Of a stretch of DNA of 64,000 nt, positions 445 to 56,458 are shown piece by piece. The notes below the pieces were generated by a model, which saw nothing but the letters and a program-made list of their open reading frames with translations, was not told the origin of the DNA and did no database searches. Within the stretch, counting starts at the first letter, position 1. Each line of letters begins with the position of its first letter. The stretch lies in contig NIVC01001279.1 of the NCBI GenBank assembly GCA_002269645.1, forward strand, positions 186,001-250,000, given 5' to 3'. The position numbers and the translations under genes were made by a program. The DNA is from Macrostomum lignano. Lineage: Eukaryota.

Positions 445-1900
445 TAGATTGATGGGACGCTAGATCGATGTGATGATAGATGGGATAATAGATCGATGGG
501 ACAGTAGATTTATGGGATAATAAATCGATGGGATAATAGATCGATGAGATAATAGATCGATAGGATAATAGATCGATGGGATAATAATAGATCGATGGGA
601 TAATTGATTGATGGGATAGTAGCTCGATGGGATAATAGATCGATGGGATAATAGATCGATGGGATAATAGATCGATGTGATGATAGATGGGATAATAGAT
701 CGATGGGACAGTAGATTGATGGGATAATAGATCGATGGGACAGTAGATTGATGGGATAATAGATCGATGGGATAATAGATCGATGAGATAATAGATCGAT
801 AGGATAATAGATCGATGGGATAATAATAGATCGATGGGATAATTGATTGATGGGATAATAGATCGATGGGATAATAGATCGATGGGATAATAGATCGATG
901 TGATGATAGATGGGATAATAGATCGATGGGACAGTAGATTTATGGGATAATAGATCGATGGGATAATAGATCGATGGGATAATAGATCGATGGGATAATA
1001 CATCGATGGGATAATAATAGATCGATGGGATAATAATAGATCGATGGTATAATAATAGATGGATAGGATAATAGATCGATGGGATAATAGATCGATGGGA
1101 TAATAATAGATCGATGGGATAATTGATCGATGGGATAATAGATCGATGGGATAATAGATCGATGGGATAATAGATCGATGGGATAATAGATCGATGGGAT
1201 AATAATTGATCGATGGGACAGTAGATCGATGGGATAATATATCGATGGGATAATAATTGATCGATGGGACAGTAGATCGATGGGATAATATATCGATGGG
1301 ATAATAATTGATCGATGGGACAGTAGATCGATGGGATAATAATAGATCGATAGGATAATGGATCGATTGGATAATAGATCGATGGGATAATAATTAATAG
1401 ATCGATGGGATAATAATTAATAGATCGATGGGATAATACATCGATGGGATAATAGATCGATGGGATAATACATCGATGGGATAATAGATCGATGGAATAA
1501 TAATAGATCGATGGGATAATAATAGATCGATGGGATAATAATAGATCGATGGGATAATAATAGATCGATGGGATAATAATAGATCGATAGGATAATAGAT
1601 CGATGGGATAATAGATCTATGGGATAATAATAGATCGATGGGATAATAATAGATCGATGGGATAATAATAGATCGATGGGATAATAATAGATCGATGGGA
1701 TAATAGATCGATGGGATAATAGATCGATGGGATAATAGATCGATGGGATAATAGATCGATGGGATAATAGATCGATGGGATAATAGATCGATGGGATAAT
1801 AGATCGATGGGATAATAGATCGATGGGATAATAGATCGATGGGATAATAGATCGATGGGATAATAGATCGATGGGATAATAGATCGATGGGATAATAGAT
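445..1900. repeat. Minisatellite of 16-bp (GATCGATGGGATAATA) and 19-bp (+ATA) units, probably in an NSF intron
   Basis: Tandem units visible directly; ORFs 395-1003 and 1394-2014 are its translations (16-aa period = 3 x 16 bp). Confidence 0.95.
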
Positions 1901-2220
1901 GGAATGGCCTTGGGAAAATAGCCTACAAAACGGTTTGTTGTTGCCCCTCCCAGGGCTGATCCGCGGGTAGCCCCCGGCTTCCCACCCCCGTTTAACAAAA
2001 CGGTTTATAGACATTCGAGGCCTCCGGGAAGTTTGGAATTATATAACAAAAGAGGGTTATTTTTCTCATTTCTCATATTCTTATACAGCAATAAAATGGT
2101 AAGCATCGACTTAAATGAATATCTAGTTCAGCATCAACCCCGATGCATCTTCGAGACCTTCAAAGAGTGGCAATTACTTTACACAGTTTTAACTGCAATC
2201 GGAATTCAAACCACTCGCAG

Positions 2221-2577
2221 GTGCACGACACTGTAGTCAACCAGCTACTGTCGAAAATCGATGGCGTTGAAACGCTGAACAACATCCTAGTCATCGGCAT
2301 GACCAATCGCAAGGACATGATCGACGAGGCCCTGCTCCGTCCGGGCCGCTTCGAGGTGCAAATGGAGATCAGCCTGCCAGACGAGCACGGCCGGCACCAG
2401 ATTCTGAGCATTCACACCAGCAAGATTCGCGACAATGGCAAATTATCGCCAGACGTTGACGTGCGCGAATTGGCAGCCAAGACTAAGAACTTTTCCGGAG
2501 CTGAACTGGCCGGGTTGGTGCGCGCGGCTACCGTGACGGCTATGAATCGTTTGGTGCAGGCGTCTGAGAAGGTTCAG
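2221..2577 (+). CDS. NSF: NSF (vesicle-fusing ATPase) exon: end of the D1 AAA domain, second region of homology
   Basis: CAG acceptor ending at 2220 and GTGAGA donor at 2578; 357 bp, phase 0/0; [16 protein letters not shown]...[21 protein letters not shown]...TKNFSGAEL is the recognisable NSF D1 signature. Upstream exons lie outside the window. Confidence 0.95.
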
Positions 2578-2780
2578 GTGAGACTATAGGCTTCCGTTTC
2601 TTCAAGTATAGTGCCGGAACCAGTATGGATAGGAATTGAAACGGCTTTGTATAAAACGCGTTAACGTGGGACTTTAAGGATTGGATTGAAAATCACGAAG
2701 GACCAGAGTTTGATTCTCATAGTTCCGTTGTATCGTTAATGAGTCTCAATATGCTGGAAGTTGTCCATGGGATGTCTCGG

Positions 2781-4018
2781 TATGGGAGTCTCTTAGTGGG
2801 TCGGCATGAGAGTCTCTTAGTGGGTCGGCATGAGAGTCTCTTAGTGGGTCGGCACGAGAGTCTCTTAGTGGGTCGGTATGAGAGTCTCTTAGTGGGTCGG
2901 TATGAGAGTCTCTTAGTGGGTCGGTTTGAGAGTCTCTTAGTGGGTCGGCATGAGAGTCTCTTAGTGGGTCGGTTTGAGAGTCTCTTAGTGGGTCGGTTTG
3001 AGAGTCTCTTAGTGGGTCGGTATGAGAGTCTTAGTGGGTCGGTTTGAGAGTCTCTTAGTGGGTCGGTTTGAGAGTCTCTTAGTGGGTCGGTTTGAGAGTC
3101 TCTTAGTGGGTCGGTTTGAGAGTCTCTTAGTGGGTCGGTATGAGAGTCTCTTAGTGGGTCGGTTTAAGAGTCTCTTAGTGGGTCGGTATGAGAGTCTCTT
3201 AGTGGGTCGGTATGAGAGTCTCTTAGTGGGTCGGTTTGAGAGTCTCTTAGTGGGTCGGTATGAGAGTCTCTTAGTGGGTCGGTTTGAGAGTCTCTTAGTG
3301 GGTCGGTTTGAGAGTCTCTTAGTGGGTCGGCATGAGAGTCTCTTAGTGGGTCGGCATGAGAGTCTCTTAGTGGGTCGGCATGAGAGTCTCTTAGTGGGTC
3401 GGTTTGAGAGTCTCTTAGTGGGTCGGTATGAGAGTCTCTTAGTGGGTCGGTTTGAGAGTCTCTTAGTGGGTCGGTATGAGAGTCTCTTAGTGGGTCGGTT
3501 TGAGAGTCTCTTAGTGGGTCGGTTTGAGAGTCTCTTAGTGGGTCGGTATGAGAGTCTCTTAGTGGGTCGGTTTAAGAGCCGCTTGATGGGTCGGTTTGAG
3601 AGTCTCTTAGTGGGTCGGTTTAAGAGCCGCTTGGTGGGTCGGTTTGAGAGTCTCTTAGTGGGTCGGTATGAGAGTCTCTTAGTGGGTCGGTATGAGAGTC
3701 TCTTAGTGGGTCGGTATGAGAGTCTCTTAGTGGGTCGGTTTAAGAGCCGCTTGATGGGTCGGTTTGAGAGTCTCTTAGTGGGTCGGTTTAAGAGCCGCTT
3801 GGTGGGTCGGTTTGAGAGTCTCTTAGTGGGTCGGTATGAGAGTCTCTTAGTGGGTCGGTATGAGAGTCTCTTAGTGGGTCGGTATGAGAGTCTCTTAGTG
3901 GGTCGGTATGAGAGTCTCTTGGTGGGTCGGCATGAGAGTCTCTTAGTGGGTCGGCATGAGAGTCTCTTAGTGGGTCGGCATGAGAGTCTCTTAGTGGGTC
4001 GGTATGAGAGTCTCTTCA
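2781..4018. repeat. 24-bp minisatellite (TGAGAGTCTCTTAGTGGGTCGGT[A/T]), about 51 copies, in an NSF intron
   Basis: Tandem units visible; ORFs 3009-4019 and 3022-4065 are 8-aa-period translations. Confidence 0.97.
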
Positions 4019-4124
4019 TACCGATCAGTCGGTATAACTCTTATAATCTGGAGATGTCTGGATGAGAAACCAGTAGCTCACATGTGTATTTTGATTCAAA
4101 TATCAAACGCTTCTGGATCTTTAG

Positions 4125-4618
4125 GTGGACCCGGACGCAATCGAAAAACTTTGCGTCACTCGTCACGACTTCTTGCACGCCCTCGAATACGACATACGGC
4201 CGTCTTTTGGTGCCAAGAAGAGGAGCTGGATCGTTACGTCACAGGCGGTCTGGTCCAATGGGGCAACCCCGTAAATCACGTGATCGAGCACGGCCTGCTG
4301 GCGACGAGAGCCGCCCGAGCCGAAGCCGAAGCTGGCGCAGATTCCGGCCGACCGGTGGCTCTGCTTCTAGAAGGACCGCGCAACAGCGGTAAAACGGCGC
4401 TGGCCGTGCACATCGCCCGACAAGCCGGATTCTCCTACGTCCGCCTGGCAACTAGCAAAAACATGGTCGGCTTCAACGAAGTGGCGAAATGCATGGCCGT
4501 TAAAAAGTTTTTCGACGACGCGCACAAAGCCAAGCAGGCCGTTGTTATTCTGGATGGACTCGAGGGACTCATAGATTACAGCCCGGTAGGGCCGAGGTAC
4601 TCAAACTATGTACTGCAG
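4125..4618 (+). CDS. NSF: NSF exon: D1-D2 linker and D2 domain, with a 1-nt frameshift near 4213-4216
   Basis: TTTAG acceptor ending at 4124 and GTGAGA donor at 4619; reads VDPDAIEKLCVTRHDFLHALEYDIRPSFGA, then in a shifted frame QEEELDRYV...LLEGPRNSGKTALA (Walker A)...PVGPRYSNYVLQ, collinear with NSF. Confidence 0.92.
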
Positions 4619-4743
4619 GTGAGACGCTGCTGGGTTACATGCCAATGGTGTAGATTTGCAACATTCTTTTGCTTTCGTTTGCCAAGAGCCTTGAGTCTTG
4701 AATCGCCTGGAGTCTCAGTGTCTTCCTGGAGTTTCAATGTCGT

Positions 4744-5112
4744 CCTGGTGTCTCTCGGAGTCCCACTGTCTCCCTGGTGTCTCTCGGAGTCTCGCTGTCT
4801 CCCTGGTGTCTCTCGGAGTCTCACTGTCTCCCTGGTGTCTCTCGGAGTCCCACTGTCTCCCTGGTGTCTCTCGGAGTCTCGCTGTCTCCCTGGTGTCTCT
4901 CGGAGTCTCACTGTCTCCCTGGTGTCTCTCGGAGTCCCACTGTCTCCCTGGTGTCTCTCGGAGTCTCACTGTCTCCCTGGTGTCTCTCGGAGTCCCACTG
5001 TCTCCCTAGTGTCTCTCGGAGTCCCACTGTCTCCCTGGTGTCTCTCGGAGTCTCACTGTCTCCCTGGTGTCTCTCGGAGTCTCACTGTCTCCCTGGTGTC
5101 TCTCGGACTCCT
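4744..5112. repeat. 29-bp minisatellite (CTCCCTGGTGTCTCTCGGAGTC[C/T]CACTGT), about 12.5 copies, in an NSF intron
   Basis: Tandem units visible (e.g. at 4801 and 4830); the 29-aa periodic ORFs are its translations. Confidence 0.95.
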
Positions 5113-5169
5113 AGTGTCTCTAAAGTCTAGATAAATAAAGGTAAATATCAACATGAAGTATTATTTGAG

Positions 5170-5212
5170 TTGCCGATGCATTTCGTCCATTTGCATTAGG
5201 ACATCGTCAGGG
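5170..5212 (-). ncRNA. Mirror copy of the hammerhead ribozyme motif on the minus strand
   Basis: Left arm of the perfect inverted repeat; CUGACGA at 5210-5204, predicted cleavage C at 5175. Confidence 0.62.
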
Positions 5213-5235
5213 TCTTTTCGTCCATTTGCAAAAGA

Positions 5236-5278
5236 CCCTGACGATGTCCTAATGCAAATGGACGAAATGCATCGGCAA
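5236..5278 (+). ncRNA. Minimal type I hammerhead ribozyme motif
   Basis: CUGACGA (5238-5244), extra U, stem II GUCC/GGAC with a 10-nt loop, GAAA (5264-5267), palindromic mini stem III AUGCAU, AUC cleavage triplet (cut 3' of 5273); stem I has only CC/GG contiguous pairs. Confidence 0.65.
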
Positions 5279-5643
5279 CTCAAATAATACTTCATGTTGA
5301 TATTTACCTTTATTTATCTACTCTTCATCAAGCGAGCCACTTTACCTGATCTCTAAAGTCTCTCAGAATGTCTTTGAATATCTCATGACCGGAGGTATAT
5401 ACCTATGTATAATCATTTATACTTTTTTATATTAAATTCTAGCCAAATCTCAGTCTCCCTGACCCCCAGGGAGACCTTATACATATATACCGGTTTATAA
5501 ATAGTATAAATCTTCGCGTAGTCTTTCAGCATTGTATTGTCTTCCCAGTGTCTTAAACACAATTCTTTTTAAGACTACCATGGATCAATCTTAGCCTCTC
5601 GAATTTATGAGCTGCTTTATTCCAACCAACTCAATAAAACCAG

Positions 5644-6006
5644 GCTCTTCGCGACCTCATCACGGCCCCGCTGCCGCGCAACAAGTGCCTGCTGCTGCTC
5701 GGCACCACCAGCTGCCGCGACGCCCTGGAAGAACTCGGCCTAGTTCAGTGCTTCACTGCCGGCAAGATCCACGTCAGTAATTTGACTCAACCGGAGCACC
5801 TGGTCACCGCGCTAAACCAGTTGGACGCGGCTAAATTTACTGAGAAAGAGGTGCGTCAGATTTACAAGTCCGTGTCCGGCTGCCGGCTGAACATCGGCAT
5901 CAAGGAGCTGCTGGACGTGGCCCGCATGACCAACCGGGTGGAGGAGGGCGACAGGGTTCGCTACTTTCTCGACCGGCTGAATGAGGACGGCAGGCTGACC
6001 GAGTAG
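5644..6006 (+). CDS. NSF: NSF terminal coding exon
   Basis: CCAG acceptor ending at 5643; ALRDLITAPLPRNKCLLLLGTTS...NIGIKELL...RVRYFLDRLNEDG* aligns with the NSF C-terminus; TAG at 6004-6006; AATAAA at 6012 and 6142. Confidence 0.9.
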   Translation, partial: ALRDLITAPLPRNKCLLLLGTTSCRDALEELGLVQCFTAGKIHVSNLTQPEHLVTALNQLDAAKFTEKEVRQIYKSVSGCRLNIGIKELLDVARMTNRVEEGDRVRYFLDRLNEDGRLTE

Positions 6007-7024
6007 AGCTTAATAAATATGTGGATGTTTAATAACATTATCAATGACGTCACTTGCTAATGTCACATAAATATCCTTAGTAGCAAAAAACTACGTCACT
6101 AGCCCAATGACGTCACTAGAATAGTCTATGATGACGTCACCAATAAATAGTTCCTAAAACCAATTGCGCTAATTGATGTAATGACAATATTTTTCTTTTC
6201 TTTTGCTTAGATTACTTTTAGTCGGTTTGATGAGTCTGAGTATCATTTTTTTTTCAATTTTCCATTTGTGAATGTTTTATATGGTTGGCAATACTGATAA
6301 AATAATAACTGATTTTTACAGGTCTCTAGCTATCGTTACTAAAGCGTAGGTTGAATTGACAGACCGCCAATTCATCAGACAATAGCATGTACAGTTTTTA
6401 CAAACTATAACAAAGCATAATACTAGATGTTGTTACTATAAATATATATATTTATATTTATACATTTCTTCTTTATGGTCTGGTACGGAAAAAAGCAATC
6501 AATGTTTTATCGTTCAAGTGAATTATTTTTGTCGTCGTTTTGCAATTTGTTATTTCACTCAGCTATAATTGGATTTCAACGGCATTTTTGTTGTGATCTT
6601 TGCGCTTTTATAGACGAAGATATAAGATTATCTCGTCAGAAATGTTTTCGTTTTTTGGGTGTTTTTCCGTGTTTTTTAAAGGCTTATTAGACTCTACACA
6701 GTATGCTATGCTGAATTTAGCTAATTCCAGGCAATATTTATTCCACATGTATAACTTATCATAGCAACGAAATAGTTTTTAGATACAGTTGGTTTTCTAT
6801 GCCCAAGTTAAAATACCTCTACGATATAGAAATCTTTTTAGTTTCTTGCTTTTTCTGTTGTTTGTATGTTCTTTTTTAGGTAACCTCGCTGTCAGTCAGT
6901 CAGTTAATCGCAAATATACACACCTTAGTTTAGAAACTTTATATATAGCGATTTAATAAAGCACTAATTAATTATATGCCTTCCTTCAGAGAATTTATTT
7001 ATTTTTTAATACTGTACTTACGAA

Positions 7025-7220
7025 AAGTGGCGGATCTAGCGGGGGGGTCAAGGGGTTTGGCTGACCCCCACCAGAGAAAATTAGGGGGGTCAAGGTGGTT
7101 GGCTGACCCCCACTGGAGAAAATGTAAGGGGGGTCAAGGGGGTTGACGGACCCACCAGAAAAAAATTGGAGGGGGCAAGGGGGGTCATGACCTCCGGGAA
7201 AAATCCAGGATTCGCCACTG
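7025..7220. mobile_element. 196-bp hAT-like MITE with internal ~40-bp subrepeats
   Basis: 12-bp terminal inverted repeats (AAGTGGCGGATC / GATTCGCCACTG, 10/12); 8-bp flanks CTTACGAA and CTTCCGAG (6/8, decayed TSD); internal GGGGGGTCAAG...CTGACCCCCA repeats. Confidence 0.65.
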
Positions 7221-8469
7221 CTTCCGAGTGGCGAATTGAATTTCCGACAGATGATAGCTCATTTTGATCCACAGTATTGGGAAAATACTTATTACATTAC
7301 GTGTATTTATTTGCTATGTTGCACTATAAATAAATTTACCCTTTTTATCAGTTGCCATGCGAAAATTCAGGTGCCAAAAACGGACGCTTAAAGCGGCGAC
7401 AAAATTTCATTTTTGAGGCGGCATCGATTTTTGCGTGTACGCATTGCTTAGGAGTAAGTCAGGCGGATTTACAAACGCAAAATTAATATACAAAAATGCG
7501 GAAATACACTCGACCGCACGTCCCCCGCGCAATCAATATCGATACGCCTGTTTCAGATCTTCTGAGTTTCTTACTGGGGGGGTGTAGGAAATTTCCACCA
7601 CCCACACCAACTTCAATCCCGAAAGAGAAGCGGTCGACTAATAATAAAAAAACACGTGACAAATTCTTCAACTTAAACAATTCTGCGTTGCCCATGGGCC
7701 ATGACTAACTTAAAATAAGCAGATCTAAGCACGAGAAATATATATTTAAAAATAAAACTCATGCAAAAAGGAAAATTGCGCCATTTAGTGGTTTTCTCTG
7801 AGTCTCAATCGTTAGAATTCCGAGCTGCCTGAAAAAGTGGAATTGATATAATAGCTTTGGCAAAATCTAGAACCCAGTCAACTAAGAGGCCAACTAATTA
7901 CTAAAGGAGAGAGGGGCGGGCTTTTAAAAGGCCATTATACAATCGTTATCGTCAGTCATATAATGCATTAAGCCGTTTCATTCTGATGCCTAGACTACGC
8001 TACGGACAAGGAACTATTTCCAGCCAAAAGGGTGAAATAAGTTCACGGCAAGTCCAAAAAGGCATTTTCCGTCTTCTCTCTACCCCGCGATATTTTCTCT
8101 CTCCACCGTGTGGCCTCCGCCAATTCCTGAAATTAGATGTACACTGCGCTTCAAGGTCCTCCCAGCTGCGCTTCTCTCCCCCTCCAGTCCCGCCACCCCA
8201 TTTCCGCGGCGGCAGTGTACACTCTTCACAAGCTTAATGTACATTCCTCCCCTGCCATTACCCCAGCCTTCAGGAGAGAGAATGAAAGAGAAGCCTCTAC
8301 CGGCCCTACTCCCTTCGATAAACAGGCCAGTAAACACAGACAGGGGTTTCTCTCCCTCGCCCCCTATCTTATATTAAAACTCGTTCCACTGCCCCCCCAC
8401 TCCGCTCAGCTGACTGAAATTAATAAAAGTCCAAAAACACCCAACGAATACTGAGAGAAACGACAGCTC

Positions 8470-8569
8470 GTGAGTCGTTAGTAGCTCAGTTATAATTATA
8501 AATTAGTCATTAAGATTATTGTTTATTAAAGTCTATCCGATAGTTTGACGAGAGTTGAGAATTTGGCAG
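8470..8569 (+). other. Probable 100-bp 5'UTR intron of the stathmin-like gene
   Basis: Consensus GTGAGT donor at 8470 and TTTGGCAG acceptor ending at 8569, 25 nt before the ATG at 8595. Confidence 0.45.
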
Positions 8570-8594
8570 GAAATTATAAAGAATATATTAAATC

Positions 8595-8864
8595 ATGTCA
8601 ACTAGTGACAATCAATCAGTAAAAACGGCTACGGCTTTTGTAATTACGGACGTTACTGACACTACCAATTGTAACGGTAATGACACAGAAGACGCTCAGA
8701 TGCACGACGCAACCACGACGCAAGTTGTCGAGGCTGAGACTGTCGGGACCGCCACCACCGCCTTGCCCGATCGACTGCGTAAACGCCTGCTTAGCGAGCG
8801 CAAGTGTCGACCAACTAACGAGCAGCTTGACCAGAAGCTGGCCAGAGCCGAGCAAAGACGCCAG
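8595..8864 (+). CDS. Exon 1 of a duplicated stathmin-like coiled-coil protein (~438 aa in total)
   Basis: ATG in AT-rich context; GTTAGT donor at 8865, phase 0; LPDRLRKRL...EQLDQKLARAEQRRQ resembles the stathmin/STMND1 KLxxAExRR motif. The family call is tentative. Confidence 0.75.
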
Positions 8865-9266
8865 GTTAGTTTAAGGGAACTTTCACCGCGACAACGCCAT
8901 TGACCTGGTATTTAGCACACGCGAAAATGCCTTTTGCGCGGTTCACATTCGTTCTCATTTGCTCAAGCTCTCATTTTGATGAATCAAGCATTTAGTTTCG
9001 CTATTTAATTATGGGTGTTTGACTAATGCCCTGTCTGGGTTTGCGTGCCGCTTTGTGAATAATTTCTTTTTGTCCACCTGGAATGAAGTAAGGCAAGGCT
9101 GGTCAGGTAACTCATTTGCATGAAAGAATTACTTGATCAAGTAATAAAGAAACTTTATTTGCATATCTCTAGTACACTACTGATGCTAACTAACCAGTAG
9201 CATGCAGGGAATGAGCATGTTGTAAATACAGCTAAAGGTAAAAAGTTTCAACAAACTCGATTTCAG

Positions 9267-9811
9267 AAACAATTCGCAAAGCGCGCTGCCAGCGCTCGCG
9301 AAGCCGAAGCTCGATGCCGCCGAGTCGCCGAGGCGATGGAGACCCTCCATGCCCGACGCCCGCAGTCTCGAGCCGAAGTTGTCCAGCGCTACGTTCGACT
9401 ACGCCACGACCTACAGGAAGTTCTGGGCCGTTTCAACAGCGAGGTGGAGCGAACCAACTGCGCCCTGTTCGCTGGCCCGCCGCTACTGGCTTTCGGCGGC
9501 GGCTTGGGCTACTCGCCGTCGACATCGTCTAGGACGTCGACATCGACAACTGCTGCAACTGCGTCAGCACCGACTGCTACTACATCGACATCAAGTTCGT
9601 GGCAGCATCGACCAGCGACAGCCTTCGTTGTTGGCCAAACCAACGGAACGATGCGCCCGCTGCAGCTGCCAGCGCAGCCGACGCGTCGATCTCCGTGGAG
9701 ATGCCGGCCCGGCTGAGACAGCGGCTGGCCGCCTACCCGAGGCGCCGGGGGCGGCACGAGCTGAAGATGGCGCTGGAGAAGAAACTGGCTGACGCCCAGC
9801 GGAGGAAAGAG
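9267..9811 (+). CDS. Exon 2 of the stathmin-like gene, with a 1-nt frameshift at about 9647-9648
   Basis: TTTCAG acceptor ending at 9266; KQFAKRAASAREAEARCRRV...ATAFVVGQTNG, then in a shifted frame NDAPAAA...MPARLRQRL...LEKKLADAQRRKE; GT donor at 9812. Confidence 0.72.
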
Positions 9812-9914
9812 GTTCGCGAGTTTCATTGGTTTTTATTTATTATTTATAGGGGATCAAATTTTGAGGGGGTCAAATGACATCCTCTCCTACTTCCACTCCC
9901 AATGGCAAGCCTTA

Positions 9915-10324
9915 GGTCAGATGACCCCCTGTCCATTACCTAGCTTACACTGGCTAGCTTTGGGGTCAGATGGTCCCCTGTCCATTACCTAGCTTACACT
10001 GGCTAGCTTTGGGGTCAGATGACCCCCTGTCCCTTACCTAGCTTACACTGGCTAGCTTTGGGGTCAGATGACCCCCTGTCCCTTACCTAGCTTACACTGG
10101 CTAGCTTTGGGGTCAGATGACCCCCTGTACATTACCTAGCTTACACTGGCTAGCTTTGGGGTCAGATGACCCCCTGTCCCTTACCTAGCTTACACTGGCT
10201 AGCTTTGGGGTCAGATGACCCCCTGTCCATTACCTAGCTTACACTGGCTAGCTTTGGGGTCAGATGACCCCCTGTCCATTACCTAGCTTACACTGGCTAG
10301 CTTTGGGGTCAGATGACCTCCTGT
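9915..10324. repeat. 49-bp minisatellite, about 8 copies, in intron 2 of the stathmin-like gene
   Basis: Unit TTTGGGGTCAGATGACCCCCTGTCCATTACCTAGCTTACACTGGCTAGC (period 9961 to 10010). Confidence 0.95.
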
Positions 10325-10476
10325 CAACTTCCTAGCCTACCCTACGAGTATATTGAACTCTTAATCTGTCAATTAGATGATGCTACTTCTATTATTTAAC
10401 ATGCACTACAGCTGATTCAGCCGCTTACAAGTGGTGTAGATAAAGCGGGTATATTGAATTTTTATTCCCCCCCCAG

Positions 10477-10823
10477 CGCTACGAACAGCGACGCGCGGAG
10501 TCGATCAAAGAGACAGAGGAGCGCTGTCGCCGAATCTCGGAGACCATGGAGGAGATCAGCCTGCAGGCGCCCGGACCCGAAAATCAGTCGGAGCCGCAGC
10601 AGCCGCAGGAGCAGCCGCAGGAGCAGCGACCGGAGCAGCAGCAAACTGGGAACGGTGAAGTCTGCAGCAGCGCTGGTTCGCGCGTGTTTTACCGACGCGT
10701 GGCTAAACTGCAAGTTGATCTCGACTGCCTGTTCACCAAGTTCAACCGGGAGATTGTGACGGTTCGGGGTAGACCGGTGGACCTGCTGGAAACGCTTGAA
10801 TGGCCCCCAAAGCCGCCGCCGCC

Positions 10824-10855
<32 letters not shown>

Positions 10856-10977
10856 CTGAAGTTGAACAGCAAAAGCAACAGCAGAAGCAGAAGCAGCAAA
10901 ATAGGATTGCTTGTCAGACAGATGATCAGATTTGCAACAACTGCGGCCAAGATCCCAATGCTTCTCGTATGGCTTGA
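10477..10977 (+). CDS. Exon 3 (terminal) of the stathmin-like gene, with a poly-Q tract
   Basis: CCCCAG acceptor ending at 10476; RYEQRRAESIKETEERCRRISETMEEI is homologous to the start of exon 2; CAG run near 10825-10855; TGA ending at 10977. Confidence 0.78.
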
Positions 10978-12254: not shown

Positions 12255-13970
12255 TTTATAGATCAGATGAGACGAGATTTAATAGATCCGATGAGACAAG
12301 ACTCTATAGATAAGATGAGACAAGACTCTATAGATCAGATGAGACAAGACTCTATAGATCAGATGAGACAAGACTCTATAGATCCGATGAGACGAGACTC
12401 TATAGATAAGATAAGACAAGACTCTATAGATCCGATGAGACGAGACTCTATAGATAAGATAAGACAAGACTCTATAGATCAGATGAGACAAGACTCTATA
12501 GATCAGATGAGACAAGACTCTATAGATCAGATGAGACGAGACTCTATAGATCAGATGAGACAAGACTCTATAGATCAGATGAGACAAGACTCTATAGATC
12601 AGATGAGACAAGACTCTATAGATAAGATGAGACAAGACTCTATAGATCAGATGAGACAAGACTCTATAGATCCGATGAGACGAGACTCTATAGATAAGAT
12701 AAGACAAGACTCTATAGATCAGATGAGACAAGACTCTATAGATCAGATGAGACAAGACTCTATAGATCAGATGAGACAAGACTCTATAGATCAGATGAGA
12801 CAAGACTCTATAGATCAGATGAGACAAGACTCTATAGATCAGATGAGACAAGACTCTATAGATCAGATGAGACAAGACTCTATAGATCCGATGAGACGAG
12901 ACTCTATAGATCAGATGAGACAAGACTCTATATATCAGATGAGACGAGACTCTATAGATCAGATGAGACAAGACTCTATAGATCAGATGAGACGAGACTC
13001 TATAGATCAGATGAGACAAGACTCTATAGATCAGATGAGACAAGACTCTATAGGTTAGATGAGACGAGACTCTATAGATCAGATGAGACAAGACTCTATA
13101 GATCAGATGAGACAAGACTCTATAGATCAGATGAGACGAGACTCTATAGATCAGATGAGACAAGACTCTATAGATCAGATGAGACAAGACTCTATAGGTT
13201 AGATGAGACGAGACTCTATAGATCAGATGAGACAAGACTCTATAGATCAGATGAGACAAGACTCTATAGATCAGATGAGACAAGACTCTATAGATCAGAT
13301 GAGACAAGACTCTATAGATCAGATGAGACGAGACTCTATAGATCAGATGAGACAAGACTCTATAGATCAGATGAGACAAGACTCTATAGATCAGATGAGA
13401 CGAGACTCTATAGATCAGATGAGACAAGACTCTATAGATCAGATGAGACAAGACTCTATAGATCAGATGAGACGAGACTCTATAGATCAGATGAGACAAG
13501 ACTCTATAGATCAGATGAGACAAGACTCTATAGATCAGATGAGACAAGACTCTATAGATCAGATGAGACAAGACTCTATAGATCAGATGAGACAAGACTC
13601 TATAGATCAGATGAGACAAGACTCTATAGATAAGATGAGACAAGACTCTATAGATCAGATGAGACAAGACTCTATAGATCAGATGAGACAAGACTCTATA
13701 GATCAGATGAGACAAGACTCTATAGATCAGATGAGACAAGACTCTATAGATCAGATGAGACAAGACTCTATAGATCAGATGAGACAAGACTCTATAGATC
13801 AGATGAGACGAGACTCTATAGATCAGATGAGACAAGACTCTATAGATCAGATGAGACAAGACTCTATAGATCAGATGAGACAAGACTCTATAGATCAGAT
13901 GAGACGAGACTCTATAGATCAGATGAGACGAGACTCTATAGATCAGATGAGACAAGACTCTATAGGTTAG
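12255..13970. repeat. 24-bp minisatellite (TATAGATCAGATGAGACAAGACTC), about 71 copies, with a degenerate lead-in from about 12020
   Basis: Tandem units visible; the 572-aa and 263-aa ORFs are 8-aa-period translations. Confidence 0.97.
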
Positions 13971-14659
13971 ATAGCACGGAAACATGTGGAATTCCACTGT
14001 TCACCACACCGAAAGCTGTCGCCTTATTCCCGACAAACATTCTATATTTTCTCCGTCAAGCAACTTATCACTCTCCATTCCAATCAGGCTATAGCTAAAG
14101 GCACGAATTAGAACGTGACCGCTGGCATGTCAAATCAGGCACGATATGAAGCAATTTTTCTGTCCCAAAATCTTTTATGCACTAAAGTTAGTAAGAGTCT
14201 GACACGCTGAAGGCATGATAGCCATACCGGGTATAGCAAAAAGGAAGATATTTGACACCATCACGCAACATATTGGGCGTGATCAAGGCGGAGATTTGAT
14301 ATAGGAGGCCTATTTAAGAAGAAATAATCGCTTGCATGATTTGAAGACTCGGAGATATGATTTCAGCAGGATTTTATGCTTACAATTCTGTAATAAATAT
14401 TCTTCAAGTGTCGCTATCTTAATGGCTTAAAGAGAACTAAAATTAGAACAACAGTATAAATCGTCCCTTACATTTGAGTACATTGAAAAATATTCCCTGA
14501 CGTCATCAGAACATTTGAGAGACTATCTCGTTTACAACTATCAATGGAGTGGGGGCTAATGACTTCAATGGACAATTTCCTAATAACCCGAGCGTTGCTC
14601 AAAAATCATTTCCTACTGTTTAGCATCGCGAATTTTACCGATTACACAACCGCCAACCC

Positions 14660-15335
14660 GAGAGAGCCAGCCCGAATCTTCCACAGAACCGCAGCCATAG
14701 CATTTCAGAGAGAGCCAGCCCGAATCTTCCACAGAACCGCAGCCATAGCATTTCAGAGAGAGCCAGCCCGAATCTTCCACAGAACCGCAGCCATAGCATT
14801 TCAGAGAGAGCCAGCCCGAATCTTCCACAGAACCGCAGCCATAGCATTTCAGAGAGAGCCAGCCCGAATCTTCCACAGAACCGCAGCCATAGCATTTCAG
14901 AGAGAGCCAGCCCGAATCTTCCACAGAACGCGCAGCCATAGCATTTCAGAGAGAGCCAGCCGAATCTTCCACAGAACCGCAGCCATAGCATTTCAGAGAG
15001 AGCCAGCCCGAATCTTCCACAGAACCGCAGCCATAGCATTTCAGAGAGAGCCAGCCCGAATCTTCCACAGAACCGCAGCCATAGCATTTCAGAGAGAGCC
15101 AGCCCGAATCTTCCACAGAACCGCAGCCTAGCATTTCAGAGAGCCAGCCCGAATCTTCCACAGAACCGCAGCCATGGCATTTCAGAGAGAGCCAGCCCGA
15201 ATCTTCCACAGAACCGCAGCCTAGCATTTCAGAGAGAGCCAGCCCGAATCTTCCACAGAACCGCAGCCTAGCATTTCAGAGAGAGCCAGCCCGAATCTTC
15301 CACAGAACCGCAGCCGAGCATTTCAGAGAGAGCCA
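14660..15335. repeat. 48-bp minisatellite (GAGAGAGCCAGCCCGAATCTTCCACAGAACCGCAGCCATAGCATTTCA), about 14 copies
   Basis: Tandem units visible; 16-aa-period ORFs; distal copies carry scattered 1-2-nt deletions. Confidence 0.95.
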
Positions 15336-16112
15336 GCAGCCCGAACCGTATATGGTTTAAGGTTTTATAGGGTTGCTCATGACCTTTCATAGAATATTTC
15401 CTAGCATCCTCCTGAGCATTACAGAGGAAACACTGCTTCTTATCAATACATACTCCCTGATTGTAAAATCGATACAACAAAGGTATCTGAAAGTTGTCTA
15501 TCAAACGACAGTAAAATGAAAGCTTACATCAATTATCGTAGATAATACGCGGTATACGATTTAGATATTGTTAGATTGAACTAATGTAAATAATAGAGTA
15601 CGAGCGTAAGGGCTAGTTTTATTGCGCCTATTTTTAGTCAGTTCAACAAAGACAATTTACTTGAAAAAACATGTGATCAATATGGTTTAGCAATCAATGT
15701 TGCGAAACAAATCAATGTTATGCATGGCACGCACAGGAAACCCGAACAAAGCAAGCGAAAAAGAAAGAATTCACAGAAAAATATTAAGCGACGCAAGACA
15801 TAAAAAGCACCTGCAAACTTTGGCAAAACAAAAAGCGCAGCAGCATGTTTATACAGCAGCAAGCACAAACAACACTAATAATATTCTATACAATGAAAGC
15901 AGTCTGTTGCATTGTGAAAAAGCAGACACGACTTCAGTAAGTAGTACTAATAAATGGAATTAAATCGCTCATTGATAGAGCTAGCAAGAACATCTATAGA
16001 ATATCCGTTGCTACTTACCGGTATAGTGAAAAAAATCATCGTCATGGCGAAAATTTGAAATAATATTTGAGCGATTTACCAGTATAGCCAACAAAAGTAA
16101 TCTCGCGTTTGC

Positions 16113-16730: not shown

Positions 16731-16810
16731 CCTTATGGCCTTTTTATCGGTGTCATATAATCTAAACATCTACATCTAATCATTTTCTCTAAAACGACTG
16801 AAACAAATCC

Positions 16811-16901
16811 NNNNNNNNNNNNNNNNNNNNNNNNNNNNNNNNNNNNNNNNNNNNNNNNNNNNNNNNNNNNNNNNNNNNNNNNNNNNNNNNNNNNNNNNNN
16901 N
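16811..16901. other. Scaffold gap (91 N) flanked by a ~1.09-kb direct duplication
   Basis: 15716-16810 matches 16902-17987 except for small indels. Confidence 0.95.
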
Positions 16902-17296
16902 TGTTATGCATGGCACGCACAGGAAACCCGAACAAAGCAAGCGAAAAAGAAAGAATTCACAGAAAAATATTAAGCGACGCAAGACATAAAAAGCACCTGC
17001 AAACTTTGGCAAAACAAAAAGCGCAGCAGCATGTTTATACAGCAGCAAGCACACAACACTAATAATATTCTATACAATGAAAGCAGTCTGTTGCATTGTG
17101 AAAAAGCAGACACGACTTCAGTAAGTAGTACTAATAAATGGAATTAAATCGCTCATTGATAGAGCTAGCAAGAACATCTATAGAATATCCGTTGCTACTT
17201 ACCGTATAGTGAAAAAATCATCGTCATGGCGAAAATTTGAAATAATATTTGAGCGATTTACCAGTATAGCAACAAAAGTAATCTCGCGTTTGCTTA

Positions 17297-36379: not shown

Positions 36380-37120
36380 TCAGTCCCAGCGGCAGTTCAT
36401 GAAGCGTATCGGCGGGTGCCTGGCTCGCTCAGATCGGCGGGGCGCTGCTGTTCTTGCCGGAGGCTCCGCCGCCGGTGCCGCCGGTGCCGCCGGTGCCGCC
36501 GTGCCGGCTCCGGTCGTTGGCGCCGAGTCCACCAGTGGGTCGAACCGCTCTCTCGGCTGCGCCGGGTGCGGTGTTCGGATCAGCCGCTGCTGGTTCCATC
36601 TGGTGCCGTCGCTGAGCTCGACCGCGTGGTGTCCCGCCTGACGGAGCACTTGTAGTGGCCGTGAGAGGCGGGTACCCAGCTTGCCCTTCTTGGTGGGCCG
36701 TCGGATTCTCACCCAATCGCCGGGGTGGAACGTCTCGGGGCGGGCCCTTCGTCTGGCATCGGTGTAGGCCTTGATCCGCTGCTGCCGCGCCTCGATTTGC
36801 TGCCGCAGTGCCTGAGGCGTCGCCTCGGTCGTTGTCATTCCCCCTCCGGGAGACAGCATGGTGATCGCGGTGCGCCACTTCCGACCCAGCATGAGCTCGG
36901 CCGGTGACTTGCCCGTCAGGCTGTGCTTGGAGCTCCGGTAGGCAGACAAGAAGTTGGTCACGGCGTCTTGAAACGGCCTGTTCTCCGCCATGGCCGCTCT
37001 GATGCTGGCGAGTAGCGACCGATTGAGACGCTCCGTCTGGCCGTTGGTCTGCGGATGGTAGAGGCTGGTCTTGACGTGCCGGATGCCCTGCTCGGCCAGG
37101 AAGTCCGAGAACTCGCTCGA
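36380..37120 (-). pseudogene. C-terminal remnant of the integrase
   Basis: SSEFSDFLAEQGIRHVKTSLYHPQTNGQTERLN...AYRSSKHSLTGKSPAELMLGR...GDWVRI; the catalytic Glu is retained, but the HHCC domain and both Asp residues are missing; out of frame with gag-pro. Confidence 0.9.
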
Positions 37121-38501
37121 TGATGCCGTCCTTCTCTATCTTGTCGAGTTCGGCACCGACCTGCTCCTGTCGCATGAGGGGCAGGCGGCGGAGTGGCTGC
37201 TGGACGGGTCGCGCTGCTGGGTCGACCTTGGGCTGGTGCACAGCGCCGGCGCAGCATCCTATCGCACCGCTGAAGGTCGTTGGGTACCGCGCCTGCAAGT
37301 CCGCCGTCAAGTCGCTGACCTCCGCGATTCCGGGTGGCTGCCCGCTAAGGTCGACTCGGAAGCCCAGCTTCTCCATCAGGTCTCTACCGACGATGTTGTC
37401 GCCGCCTGGCGCAACGAAGAACCGGTGCTGCATCGCCTTGTCGCCGTAGCGCACCTTCAGCTCGGTGACACCACTTAGCTGGATCGGCAGTCCACCGTAG
37501 GCACGCAGCTTCGTCGTAGTGGGAGAGGTGACTGCACCTGAGATCCGGTCGGCGGTCTGTCGGGACAGCAGCGACACCCTTGCGCCGCAGTCCACCATCA
37601 GGCTGACAGCGGTCCTGTCCGGTCCGAGTTCCAGCGTCGCCCGGACCTCCCTGTCGCCACCCGGCACTGCGTAGACTGTGATCACCTCGTCCGCGGCATT
37701 GACAGCAGCCTGCTGGCTGCGACAGCAACTCCGGAAGTGGTTCTTCTTGCCACAGGCGTCGCATGTCTTGCCCTTGGCCGGACAGGGGGTCGTCGGTCCG
37801 TGGTCTCGCCCACAGCGTGTGCAGGCGCCGCCGGGTTTGGCCGTCCTGCCAGCTGGTGCTGGGCGGTGCCTCCCCTTTGCAGCGACCTTCTGGCCCCTCG
37901 GCTGTCGGATCGATTGGACGGCTGCCGTGCTCGAGATTGATGGCGCCATCGCCTTGGCTTCTTTGGAGGCTTCCTCGATGGAGACCGCGATGCTGAGCGC
38001 TTTCGCCAGGTTGAGGTCCTCCACCTTCTCCGTCAGCAGCCTCTCTCGGATTCTGGGGTTACTGGTCTTCTCAGCCAGCTGGTCTCTGATGAGATCGTCC
38101 TGTATCGCGCCGTAGTTGCACAGCTCCGTCAGCTCCCTCAGGGCTGCCACGAAGGTCTTGACGTCCTCGCCGGGTAGCTGCTGGCGCTGGCGGAAGCGAT
38201 ATCTGGCTACCATCACGTTGGGCTTCTCGCCGAAGATCTTCTCGAGCTCCGCCTTAGTTGCTGCGAACGTGTCGTTCTCCTTGATTGCTTGGCGTGCTCG
38301 AGCAACCCGCTGACCTTCAAATCCAAGCAGATGGAGCAGAAGGCTCCTCTTCAGCGGTTTCGCCTCTTCCTTCCCTTCGGGCTCCTTGAATTGGGCCGCC
38401 TCGTAATAAAATTCAAAGGCCTCAATCCATCGGCTCCATGGTACTGTCGGTGATCCGCAGTTCGCCAGGAAGGGCGTGGGTGCAGGGATGCTAGCCGCCA
38501 T
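37111..38501 (-). CDS. Gag, aspartic protease and first residues of RT of the Gypsy element (~463 aa before the deletion junction)
   Basis: ATG at 38501 overlaps the PBS; CX2CX3-4HX4-5C knuckles (CTRCGRDH..C, CDACGKKNHFRSCC); protease LMVDCGARVS; RT start PLRRLP...ELDKIEKDGIIERV. Confidence 0.92.
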
Positions 38502-39767
38502 CCTCGTCGCCAATGTTCTGTTGTGGAATTAACGAACGCAGAAACAAGATAGATAATTATCCGGGCGCTCAGTGGCACCAAAAGAAGGGCTTGGCCAATA
38601 GGAGGGCGGCTCGTATATTTATGCACGCGGGGAAGGAAAGTTCTAGAAAGACCGGGGAAGGAAACTTCTGGAACTATGCGTAAACAAGTCCGCGGTGGAA
38701 GTTTCTAGAAACGCTGTCCCCGAACTACCCCTACGCATCGCATGCCTTTGCAATACACAACAAAAATTACTTAATTTGCATTAGCATTCAATCACAATTT
38801 TACGACAAAGTCAATGGAGCGCTAATTGTCGATGTCATAGAGAGAACCATGTCTCTGTATCGAACTAGTTTCGGAGCTATTCAAAGCGATTTTTTGCCAA
38901 TTCTAGTGTATTTATAGATAGGAAAAGTCCAAGAAATGTAACTTGCATTTGCCAAACTGTATCGTTGAAGATTTGGCTTCATAATCTTGAGTTCGAGCCG
39001 ACAAATTGATCAGGTCTTTAACCCCAAGACTGCAGGGCAGGCCAAGCCGCAAACTGTGTCTATGGCATGAACTCATCAGCGCAGTCTAGGGGTTAATCTA
39101 AGAACATCCACCCCGGATCCAGGCGAGCCTAATTAAGCATTACTTACGTGACATCCCAACAGAGCGCCACAGGAAGGACCCGAGGACCTCCCTGTCCGTG
39201 ATCATCAAAGAATTAGACCTAAGCAACCGTAAGCCCTCCAGGTAATAAGTAGTCTTCTAAGTATTCTTACGCTCCACGCAGGCCCTTCAAGGATTTGTGG
39301 AATGGGTGACGCCTCAAAGCTGTCATCAAAGCGGTCGAACAAAGGAAAAGCATTAATGCTCAACGAGATTAACAACAGCTTCTGGAAAGAAGCAAGATAG
39401 TAATTTCTATATCAGCTACTTTTGAGCAAACCTTGTACGTGGCGTCAGTAGATAACTAATTATATTTCTCCTTAATTTATAACTCTTTTGTTGGTTAAAA
39501 AGTACAACAGTTACTCGAGGATTACGAGTATAATATTTTCTGCATTTTCATGATCGCGAATGTCTACAGGTAATTAATTTTACGATAGATTTACAGATTT
39601 ACACGTAACCGTACATGCAGCATTGAGGTAAAATGTACACGTCACATGAAAAAACTTAGAATTATAGTAGAATTGAAAGAAAGAAATAAAACATCAAACA
39701 AACCGGTTCAAGAAGAATCTTCCCAAATCTCACACATGCAGCCATACGCTGGTACAGGACATGTAAA

Positions 39768-53090: not shown

Positions 53091-53254
53091 GATAAATGCT
53101 CTGATGAACGTTTGAAGGTCAAATTTAACGTAACTACTCACTAAGTAGTACAAGTATACCGAATATATCAAAATATTTATTTTTATAAAAGAAAGTCTAA
53201 AATAGTTAAATATCCTTTTTCAAATGTGAAAAACGAATTTATTATCCAATACTT

Positions 53255-56200: not shown

Positions 56201-56257
56201 CTGACACTCTCTCTTGACTCTTATCTGACACTCTCTCTTGACTCTTATCTGACACTC
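53255..56257. repeat. 24-bp minisatellite (CTCTCTCTTGACTCTTATCTGACA), about 120 copies, with a 26-bp variant block at about 54885-55030
   Basis: Tandem units visible; all SDKSQERV/RECQIRVK ORFs are its translations. Confidence 0.97.
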
Positions 56258-56262
56258 TAACA

Positions 56263-56458
56263 CGCAAGAGACGCCAGGCCTCAGATTAATGCTAGCAAGT
56301 AAGATATGGTCACCAAGGCGCTGCTGCAGAGATTCGACCAAAGGTAGCTCCTGTCTGTCTACCTTGCGAAGACGAGAAAGGTCTGTCGGGCAAGTGCAGT
56401 GTAGACGAACAAGAAACTGACGGCTTATAAAAGTGCAGTCGGCGCTGCACTGATGCGG
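56263..56458 (-). CDS. Possible upstream exon of the CRAL-TRIO/spectrin gene
   Basis: CACAG acceptor and an open, protein-like frame (PHQCSADCTFISRQFLVRLHC...QELPLVESL...LLASINLRPG); donor weak and no in-frame link to 51053 was established. Confidence 0.25.

What the first reader, a model, noticed from the sequence alone, without database searches (positions are those of the whole stretch)
5117..5361. Intronic foldback carrying hammerhead ribozymes on both strands (Penelope-like pseudo-LTR relic)
Seen in the sequence: perfect 91-bp inverted arms, a 29-nt tail on only one arm, and 12-bp direct repeats (TCTCTAAAGTCT) bracketing the insert. Each arm holds CUGACGA-U-GUCC(10 nt)GGAC-GAAA-UGCA-UC, i.e. 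the full hammerhead core with a 2-bp palindromic stem III (AUGCAU) and an AUC site. Established: Penelope-like elements carry minimal hammerheads with palindromic stem III that cleave as dimers, leave inverted pseudo-LTRs with a one-sided tail, and make variable TSDs. An extra base between A9 and G10.1 is tolerated in natural hammerheads, and GUCC/GGAC is the stem II of the schistosome SM-alpha hammerhead. Inference: this is a minimal self-cleaving retro-insertion inside a housekeeping pre-mRNA, where the long hairpin would switch the ribozyme off. Weak point: only two contiguous stem I pairs.
Basis: partly seen in the sequence, partly recalled or inferred. Interest (0 to 1): 0.8.

Follow-up and report, generated by a model that had tools for sequence, protein, structure and literature searches.

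The report
Truncated Penelope-type retroelement relic with hammerhead motif
A 233-bp piece of a Penelope-type jumping gene, inserted as two head-to-head copies that each carry a hammerhead-ribozyme motif, sits in the last intron of the NSF gene of the flatworm Macrostomum lignano; it is a well-preserved but ordinary transposon remnant that is almost certainly inactive where it lies.

Summary
There are two perfect 91-nt inverted arms (5128-5218 / 5230-5320), an 11-nt spacer and a 29-nt tail on the right arm only (5321-5349). The only two copies of TCTCTAAAGTCT in the window bracket the insert. Each arm carries CUGACGA-U-GUCC(10)GGAC-GAAA-UGCA-UC.

The window is Macrostomum lignano (Mlig_3_7). 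The insert lies in the last intron (4619-5643) of NSF.

The motif has the features published for hammerheads of Penelope-like elements (PLEs): an extra base between positions 9 and 10.1, a G10.1-C11.1 pair, and a palindromic helix III. The insertion also has the published PLE architecture: a 5'-truncated head-to-head inverted copy, a one-sided tail of about 30 bp, and a short target-site duplication.

A descriptor built from those features finds only these two sites in the window. It finds none in 38 Mb of simulated sequence. It does recover the published Anolis PLE hammerhead.

Weak points:
- No Rfam hammerhead model matches.
- Helix I has 2 bp.
- There is no other copy and no PLE reading frame in the window.
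- The rest of the genome was out of reach, so homology, covariation and an empty site are untested.

In the NSF transcript the region folds into a -162 kcal/mol hairpin, so cleavage is very unlikely. Verdict: a real but ordinary transposon relic, a new member of a known kind.

The parts
4619..5643 (+). Host intron: the last intron of the NSF (vesicle-fusing ATPase) gene. It contains a 29-nt minisatellite (4728-5107) immediately upstream of the insert.
   Evidence: Donor CTGCAG|GTGAG at 4618/4619, from alignment to a congener transcript. Acceptor ccag|GCTCTT at 5643/5644. Pfam AAA and NSF_ATPase_lid on the joined exons. Minisatellite.
5117..5128 (.). Left copy of the target-site duplication, TCTCTAAAGTCT.
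   Evidence: One of only two occurrences in the window.
5128..5218 (-). Left arm: an inverted, 5'-truncated copy of the element. The element's sense strand is the minus strand and its 3' end lies at 5128/5129. It has no tail.
   Evidence: Exact reverse complement of 5230-5320.
5175..5210 (-). Hammerhead motif of the left copy. The predicted cleavage site on the minus strand lies between 5175 and 5174.
5216..5230 (+). Junction of the two copies. It is a 15-nt TTTCGTCCATTTGCA direct duplicate of 5181-5195 and covers the 11-nt spacer 5219-5229. It contains the 8-nt palindrome TTTGCAAA (5225-5232).
   Evidence: family D4, pair I2. Palindromes at inverted PLE junctions are reported in PMC3846280.
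5230..5320 (+). Right arm: a 5'-truncated copy of the element in sense orientation, the same orientation as NSF.
5238..5273 (+). Hammerhead motif: C3UGACGA9, extra U, helix II GUCC/GGAC with a 10-nt loop, G12AAA15.1, UGCA, U16.1 C17. The predicted cleavage site is 5273/5274. Helix I is only C5236-G5275 and C5237-G5274.
   Evidence: Same layout as the published Anolis PLE (PAc) hammerhead, which the same descriptor recovers.
5321..5349 (+). One-sided 29-nt 'tail' at the 3' end of the right copy. The only ATG whose frame stays open to the end of the insert is at 5296 (MLIFTFIY|LLFIKRATLP).
   Evidence: A tail of 30-40 bp (31 bp in Adineta vaga) at one end only, and a pLTR that includes the first codons of the ORF, are described.
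5350..5361 (.). Right copy of the target-site duplication, TCTCTAAAGTCT.

Best explanation
This is a dead-on-arrival insertion made by the machinery of a Penelope-like retroelement (PLE). Only the last 91-120 nt or so of the element RNA were copied. That is the end of the pseudo-LTR, which carries the element's type-I hammerhead motif.

Shown directly:
- A 233-bp insert lies between 12-bp target-site duplications in the last NSF intron of Macrostomum lignano.
- It is built of two head-to-head 5'-truncated copies whose 3' ends face outward.
- One copy ends 29 nt further out than the other.
- Each copy holds a complete hammerhead core with the PLE-specific traits.

Inferred origin:
- The PLE endonuclease nicked both target strands 12 bp apart.
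- Reverse transcription was primed on both strands, or on one strand followed by a turn-around.
- It started at the two alternative internal start sites known for PLEs, which explains the one-sided tail.
- It stopped after about 100 nt, and the two cDNA ends were joined by template switching or microhomology. This left the 15-nt local duplication and the small palindrome at the centre.
- The template RNA had not been cut by the ribozyme, because sequence on both sides of the predicted cleavage site is present in both arms.

Inferred present state:
- The insert has no function.
- In the NSF pre-mRNA the sense motif is paired along its whole length with its antisense copy, in a 91-bp perfect hairpin.
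- There is no second sense copy to form the dimeric helix III that such ribozymes need, so self-cleavage is not expected.
- Zero differences between the arms and between the duplications point to a fairly recent insertion.
For: Anatomy.

Organism and host gene: GCA_002269645.1 = M. lignano Mlig_3_7; NSF, intron 4619-5643.

Motif is not chance: (2 hits in the window, 0 in 38 Mb simulated).

PLE hammerhead traits (PMC4209133):
- A G10.1-C11.1 pair.
- Palindromic 15.2-16.2 / loop 3.
- The Drosophila virilis variant has a 2-bp helix I and a 2-nt palindromic insert in helix III.
- Opposite-strand pairs lie 100-700 bp apart.
- Monomers are inactive.

Positive control: the same descriptor finds the hammerhead of the Anolis PLE (PAc), CUGAGGA-U-GCCUGC..GUGGGC-GAAA-CG-UC, which also has the extra U.

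PLE insertion architecture:
- An adjacent inverted 5'-truncated copy and a 30-40-bp tail at one end only (PMC8557442).
- A 31-bp tail, TSDs of 8-10 bp, palindromes at inverted junctions, head-to-head as the commonest arrangement, and a pLTR that includes the first codons of the ORF (PMC3846280).

Mechanism (PMC11167929):
- The PLE protein cleaves and extends both strands.
- It starts reverse transcription at two internal sites, and the interval between them is the tail.
- Uncleaved RNA is the dominant template.

Hairpin energy of -161.9 kcal/mol.
Against: - No Rfam hammerhead model matches the region at gathering score or at E<=10, even when the arm is searched alone.
- Helix I has only 2 contiguous pairs. 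Helix II has 4 bp, not the 6-8 bp typical of PLE minimal hammerheads.
- The predicted best dimer fold (-23.3 kcal/mol) is not the hammerhead dimer (-16.1 kcal/mol).
- There is no second copy of the arm and no RT/GIY-YIG remnant in the 64-kb window.
- No homologous sequence was found in the collections that could be scanned.
- Descent from a PLE therefore rests on architecture and motif grammar, not on sequence homology.
- The tail is 29 nt and the TSD 12 bp, both just outside the ranges quoted in the papers read (30-40 nt; 8-10 bp).
Confidence: 0.8

Rival explanations
1. A non-autonomous hammerhead-bearing retroelement rather than a truncated autonomous PLE. This would be a monomer of an animal 'non-LTR retrozyme' or a Sm-alpha-like SINE, copied into the intron. 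It would still most likely have been mobilised in trans by PLE enzymes.
For: - Helix II (GUCC/GGAC, 4 bp) and a helix III of 1 bp plus a 4-nt palindromic loop are those of canonical metazoan type-I hammerheads, as found in retrozymes.
- GUCC...CAAAU...GGAC-GAAA matches the Schistosoma Sm1/N79 hammerhead.
- On the minus strand the junction reads as a partial second copy of UGCAAAUGGACGAAA, 35 nt upstream. This could be a vestige of a tandem source.
- Dispersed monomers are common, and about 43% lie in introns in Xenopus. Retrozymes are related to PLE pLTRs.
Against: - There is no tandem repeat of a unit in the same orientation here.
- The one-sided tail and the inverted head-to-head copy are hallmarks described for PLE insertion units themselves.
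- The two readings cannot be separated without the family consensus.
Confidence: 0.12
2. A foldback or miniature inverted-repeat DNA transposon whose arms contain a hammerhead-like string by chance.
For: - Long perfect inverted arms flanked by direct repeats are what a MITE looks like at first sight.
- No Rfam hammerhead hit.
- Helix I is nearly absent.
Against: - The insert is asymmetric. With the 29-nt tail included, as the direct repeats require, the two termini are not inverted repeats of each other.
- A 12-bp TSD is longer than those I know for DNA transposon superfamilies (own knowledge).
- The motif carries three PLE-specific traits beyond the core and was not seen in 38 Mb of simulated sequence.
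Confidence: 0.05
3. A local repair or replication product, or an assembly artefact of the PacBio-based assembly. This would be fold-back synthesis at a break with captured filler DNA. It would not be a transposition event.
For: - The assembly has at least one probable indel error nearby, a 1-nt deletion in an NSF exon.
- Template switching is evident at the centre of the foldback.
Against: - The clean 12-bp duplication sits exactly at the insert borders.
- The insert has 34% G+C and is unrelated to anything else in the window.
- It contains a complete ribozyme core.
- Missed-adapter artefacts give kilobase-scale palindromes, not 91-nt arms inside a 322-kb contig (own knowledge; contig length).
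Confidence: 0.03

Closest known systems
Minimal / atypical type-I hammerheads in the pseudo-LTRs of Penelope-like elements (Cervera & De la Pena 2014, PMC4209133). Closest are the Drosophila virilis, rotifer, shrimp and mosquito variants with a small palindromic helix III, and the Anolis Poseidon (PAc) hammerhead.
   Same: - Core CUGANGA...GAAA...UH.
- An unpaired base between A9 and G10.1; it is a U, as in PAc.
- A G10.1-C11.1 pair.
- A palindromic helix III (AUGCAU here, ACGU in PAc), which implies action as a dimer.
- A very short helix I (2 bp here and in D. virilis, 3 bp in PAc).
- The motif lies within about 50-90 nt of the 3' end of the insertion unit.
- It occurs as an opposite-strand pair.
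   Different: - Helix II has only 4 bp with a 10-nt loop, against 6-8 bp in most PLE minimal hammerheads.
- No attached RT/GIY-YIG reading frame.
- No family of copies is available for covariation.
- The host, Macrostomum lignano, was not found in any paper on PLE hammerheads in the library searched.
PLE insertion units with an inverted 5'-truncated pLTR and a one-sided tail (Arkhipova et al. 2013, PMC3846280; Craig et al. 2021, PMC8557442; PAc biochemistry 2024, PMC11167929).
   Same: - Head-to-head inverted copies.
- An optional extension of about 30 bp at one 3' end only.
- A short TSD.
- A palindrome or microhomology at the inverted junction.
- Insertion next to a simple repeat.
   Different: - Extreme truncation: both copies are only about 91-102 nt, so nothing but the pLTR end is left.
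- The tail is 29 nt, against 30-40 nt.
- The TSD is 12 bp, against 8-10 bp in A. vaga.
Schistosoma Sm-alpha / Sm1 canonical type-I hammerhead and animal non-LTR retrozymes.
   Same: - Identical helix II (GUCC/GGAC).
- CAAAU in loop 2.
- A short palindromic helix III.
- A flatworm host.
   Different: - Sm1 has a 6-bp helix I with the loop contacts needed for fast cleavage, and no extra base after A9.
- Retrozymes are same-orientation tandem arrays. This insert is an inverted pair.

Membership tests
Hammerhead ribozyme, type I (Rfam hammerhead families) | Conserved catalytic core C3-U4-G5-A6-N7-G8-A9 ... G12-A13-A14 ... cleavage after H17 | tested here: met
   CUGACGA ... GAAA ... UC at 5238-5273 (+) and 5175-5210 (-).
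Hammerhead ribozyme, type I (Rfam hammerhead families) | Score at or above the gathering threshold of an Rfam hammerhead covariance model | tested here: not met
   No hammerhead family is listed at gathering score for the whole window. None is listed at E<=10 for 5100-5380 or for the arm alone, 5226-5300.
Hammerhead ribozyme, type I (Rfam hammerhead families) | Three helices around the core, with helix I of about 4-6 bp | tested here: not met
   Helix II has 4 bp. Helix III has 1 bp in a monomer and 6 bp only as a dimer. Helix I has 2 contiguous pairs.
Hammerhead ribozyme, type I (Rfam hammerhead families) | Self-cleavage leaving 2',3'-cyclic phosphate and 5'-OH ends | not testable with these tools
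   Needs in vitro transcription or end mapping.
PLE-type hammerhead (Cervera & De la Pena 2014) | [quoted passage not shown] | tested here: met
   U5245 (extra=1). The criterion is quoted. The PAc control also has a U.
PLE-type hammerhead (Cervera & De la Pena 2014) | G10.1-C11.1 pair, and palindromic 15.2-16.2 / loop 3 | tested here: met
   G5246-C5263 pair; A-UGCA-U palindrome at 5267-5272.
PLE-type hammerhead (Cervera & De la Pena 2014) | Enlarged helix II (6-8 bp) | tested here: not met
   Only GUCC/GGAC, 4 bp, and no extension is possible. This looks like canonical animal hammerheads instead.
PLE-type hammerhead (Cervera & De la Pena 2014) | Belongs to a genomic family of copies showing covariation, with some copies in the pLTRs of elements that have an RT/GIY-YIG ORF | not testable with these tools
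   There is no other copy and no PLE ORF in the window. The rest of the M. lignano genome could not be reached. Scans of other collections were empty.
Penelope-like element insertion unit | 5'-truncated copy with an adjacent inverted 5'-truncated copy (head-to-head) | tested here: met
   Arms 5128-5218 (-) and 5230-5320 (+), with their 3' ends outward.
Penelope-like element insertion unit | An extension ('tail') of about 30-40 bp present at one end only | tested here: met
   29 nt at 5321-5349, absent from the left arm. It is 1 nt short of the quoted range.
Penelope-like element insertion unit | Short target-site duplication | tested here: met
   12 bp, perfect, and unique in the window. The papers read report 8-10 bp, or none.
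Penelope-like element insertion unit | Single ORF with a telomerase-like RT and a GIY-YIG endonuclease | tested here: not met
   tblastn of the PAc protein against the window gives nothing below E=1.9. This is expected for a copy truncated to about 100 nt, so the locus is a relic, not an element.
Penelope-like element insertion unit | The pLTR end and tail contain the first codons of the element's ORF | tested here: inconclusive
   ATG at 5296 is the only start whose frame stays open to the end of the tail: 8 codons in the arm, 18 with the tail. A. vaga has 12 and 22. An 18-codon open frame is not significant on its own.
MITE / foldback DNA transposon | Terminal inverted repeats at both true ends of the insert | tested here: not met
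   The right end, as delimited by the TSD, is the unpaired 29-nt tail.
Animal non-LTR retrozyme | Same-orientation tandem repeats of a unit carrying a type-I hammerhead | tested here: not met
   No direct tandem. Only a 15-nt partial duplicate at the junction.

The most novel reading that the evidence does not exclude
The insert has been put to use by the host. One possibility is that the 91-bp perfect intronic hairpin is processed into small RNAs that silence active PLE copies in trans. Another is that transient folding of the sense hammerhead during transcription, before the hairpin closes or with a factor supplying helix III, cleaves some NSF pre-mRNA and so tunes NSF output.
Probability: 0.04. 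Interest if true: 0.55.

Novelty: new member of a known kind. Interest (0 to 1): 0.25.

Why it matters
The locus is a textbook-clean example of how Penelope-like elements insert. It shows nicks on both strands, two alternative start sites for reverse transcription, uncleaved template RNA, and joining by template switching.

It indicates that Macrostomum lignano, a laboratory flatworm with transgenesis, has or recently had an active PLE family. That family's hammerhead combines PLE traits with the helix II of the schistosome ribozyme. The arm and tail sequence gives a ready probe to retrieve the family from the genome.

For the host gene it probably means nothing beyond a long double-stranded RNA stem in an intron. 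Comparable motifs are already known in their thousands in other animal genomes.

Tried and rejected
1. Rfam scans: the whole window at gathering score, then the region and the single arm at E<=10. No hammerhead appeared. The only hits were sub-threshold matches of the perfect hairpin to miRNA-precursor models (mir-7883 at 42.8 bits against a cutoff of 50, mir-873, mir-2568 and others). I treated these as generic hairpin matches. No paper mentions miR-7883.

2. Other copies in the window: blastn with word size 7 found only 11-14-nt chance matches.

3. PLE protein remnants in the window: tblastn with the Anolis PAc protein found none.

4. Reaching paralogous S/L1/L2 loci, or any other M. lignano DNA, for an empty-site test and a copy search:
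   - The NSF exons found only a transcript contig from what appears to be another Macrostomum species (84-85% DNA identity), which ends about 190 nt into the intron.
   - The downstream neighbouring gene gave nothing.
   - The GPCR at 28475 found only itself.
   - The 610-aa ORF at 60997 is not on record.

5. Pattern scans for the motif or arm in metagenome contigs (two scans) and viral contigs: 0 hits. PAc relatives in viral contigs: none.

6. Literature on Macrostomum together with Penelope or hammerhead: nothing relevant.

7. Bacterial promoter/terminator scan: irrelevant for a eukaryote.

8. A simple self-priming snap-back through the 11-nt complementarity between 5219-5229 and 5254-5264: rejected. 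It would give a junction reading GCAAATGGACG-AAATGCATC, not the observed GCAAATGGACG-AAAAGACCC (reasoned).

Full report
**What is there**

- The 12-mer TCTCTAAAGTCT lies at 5117-5128 and again at 5350-5361.
- Between the two copies, 5128-5218 is the perfect reverse complement of 5230-5320 (91/91).
- The arms are separated by the 11-nt spacer CGTCCATTTGC (5219-5229).
- The right arm is followed by 29 unpaired bases (5321-5349, CTCTTCATCAAGCGAGCCACTTTACCTGA). These have no counterpart on the left.
- The 12-mer has no other match in the 64-kb window, even with one mismatch allowed.
- The insert has 34% G+C and resembles nothing else in the window.
- The repeat finder also shows that the centre is not a plain turn. 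TTTCGTCCATTTGCA at 5216-5230 is a direct duplicate of 5181-5195 (D4), and the junction contains the palindrome TTTGCAAA.

**Where it is**

- A single-exon GPCR gene in the window is on record in GCA_002269645.1, contig NIVC01001279.1. Papers identify this assembly as Macrostomum lignano Mlig_3_7.
- The flanking exons encode the D1 and D2 AAA domains and the lid of NSF.
- Alignment to a related species' transcript fixes the donor at 4618/4619. The acceptor is at 5643/5644.
- The insert therefore sits in the 1025-nt last intron of NSF. It lies directly after a 29-nt minisatellite, 498 nt from the donor and 282 nt from the acceptor.

**The hammerhead motif**

- Each arm contains CUGACGA-U-GUCC-UAAUGCAAAU-GGAC-GAAA-UGCA-UC, at 5238-5273 (+) and 5175-5210 (-).
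- I wrote a descriptor from the published grammar: core boxes, 0-1 extra base, helix II of at least 4 bp closed by G-C, a palindromic helix III, and UH.
- It hits only these two sites in the window and nothing in 300 simulated windows (38 Mb).
- A looser descriptor adds two AT-rich hits, within the chance expectation.
- As a positive control, the same descriptor recovers the hammerhead of the Anolis Poseidon element at its pLTR/ORF junction: CUGAGGA-U-GCCUGC...GUGGGC-GAAA-CG-UC.
- Against this, no Rfam hammerhead model matches, not even at E<=10 on the isolated arm.
- Helix I has two pairs.

**Comparison with the literature**

Cervera and De la Pena (PMC4209133) list traits that emerged in PLE hammerheads beyond their search pattern:
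- a nucleotide between 9 and 10.1;
- a G10.1-C11.1 pair;
- palindromic 15.2-16.2 or loop 3.

All three are present here. The same paper describes:
- a Drosophila virilis variant with a 2-bp helix I and a 2-nt palindromic insert in helix III;
- pairs of motifs on opposite strands, 100-700 bp apart;
- undetectable cleavage by monomers;
- about 2,000 to 9,000 such motifs per genome in a schistosome and a frog.

Helix II here (4 bp, GUCC/GGAC) is that of canonical animal hammerheads, not the 6-8 bp of most PLE motifs. It is identical to helix II of the Schistosoma Sm1/N79 ribozyme.

**The insertion architecture**

- PLE insertions are 5'-truncated. They often have an adjacent inverted 5'-truncated copy, and a 30-40-bp tail at one end only (PMC8557442).
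- In Adineta vaga the tail is 31 bp and TSDs are 8-10 bp. [quoted passage not shown]
- The purified Anolis PLE protein cleaves and extends both target strands. It starts reverse transcription at two internal sites whose interval is the tail, and it uses uncleaved RNA (PMC11167929).
- The locus fits each point. The 3' ends face outward, the tail is 29 nt, and the TSD is 12 bp. The junction carries a palindrome and a duplication. Both arms include sequence on both sides of the predicted cleavage site.
- The only ATG whose frame stays open to the end of the insert (5296) would give 8 codons in the arm and 18 with the tail. This is suggestive but not significant.

**How it most likely arose and what it does now**

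- Inference: staggered nicks 12 bp apart were followed by target-primed reverse transcription from the distal start site on one strand and the proximal one on the other. Alternatively a single cDNA turned round.
- Synthesis aborted after about 100 nt, and the ends were joined by template switching.
- Today the whole region folds as RNA into one hairpin of -161.9 kcal/mol. The sense motif is therefore locked against its antisense copy.
- No second sense copy is present to build the dimeric helix III.
- Even for two free copies, the predicted best dimer (-23.3 kcal/mol) is not the hammerhead dimer (-16.1 kcal/mol).
- The ribozyme is therefore expected to be silent and the insert neutral.
- Identical arms and identical TSDs suggest a recent event.

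**What could not be done**

- The rest of the M. lignano genome was out of reach.
- Three protein searches found only a related species' transcript and the window's own GPCR.
- Other look-ups and pattern scans were empty.
- As a result, homology to a PLE with an ORF, covariation among copies, and an empty-site homeolog remain untested. They are the decisive next steps.

**Verdict**

It is an ordinary transposon relic of a kind known in thousands of copies elsewhere. It is a new member of a known kind, with an interest score of about 0.25.

Noticed in passing
window 4213-4214: The NSF exon has a 1-nt deletion relative to the transcript contig of a related species (GGTGC-CAAGAAG against GGCGCTCAAGAAG). 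This shifts the frame between ...RPSFGA and EEELDRY... It is either an indel error of the PacBio-based assembly or a pseudogenised homeolog of this neopolyploid genome.
   Followed up: partly
window 445-1900, 2777-4016, 4728-5107, 9915-10340, 12267-13997, 14544-15227, 53242-56470, 57578-58855: Introns and intergenic DNA are packed with long minisatellite arrays, with periods of 16, 24, 29 and 49 nt and others. These give spurious long ORFs on both strands. The PLE-type insert lies 10 bp beyond the last unit of the 29-nt array.
   Followed up: partly
window 5163-5285: The foldback scores 42.8 bits (E 1.9e-07; gathering score 50) against Rfam mir-7883. The arms share AUUUGAGU and CGAUGCA with the model consensus. 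Other miRNA-precursor models score 25-39 bits. This is probably a generic perfect-hairpin effect, but a transposon-derived origin of that miRNA family was not excluded.
   Followed up: partly
window 36380-38513 (-): A retrotransposon gag-protease remnant: weak Pfam hits to aspartyl protease and PNMA/gag. It is broken into overlapping frames and sits in a 62% G+C block.
   Followed up: partly
window 15677-15868 and 16776-17054, gap 16811-16901: A 91-base run of N is flanked by a duplicated segment. The same 51-residue ORF translation appears on both sides of the gap, which suggests a scaffolding join or a collapsed repeat.
   Followed up: no
window 8595-10977 (+): Downstream of NSF lies a multi-exon gene. 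It has repeated coiled-coil-like segments (LPDRLRKRLL...QKLARAEQRRQ; RLRQRLAAY...KKLADAQRRKE) and Q-rich tracts. It has no homologue in the protein collection searched.
   Followed up: partly
window 5245-5247; PAc junction: In both the M. lignano motif and the Anolis PAc hammerhead, A9, the extra U and G10.1 spell AUG. In PAc this is the start codon of the element's ORF. Here it is followed by a stop after two codons.
   Followed up: no
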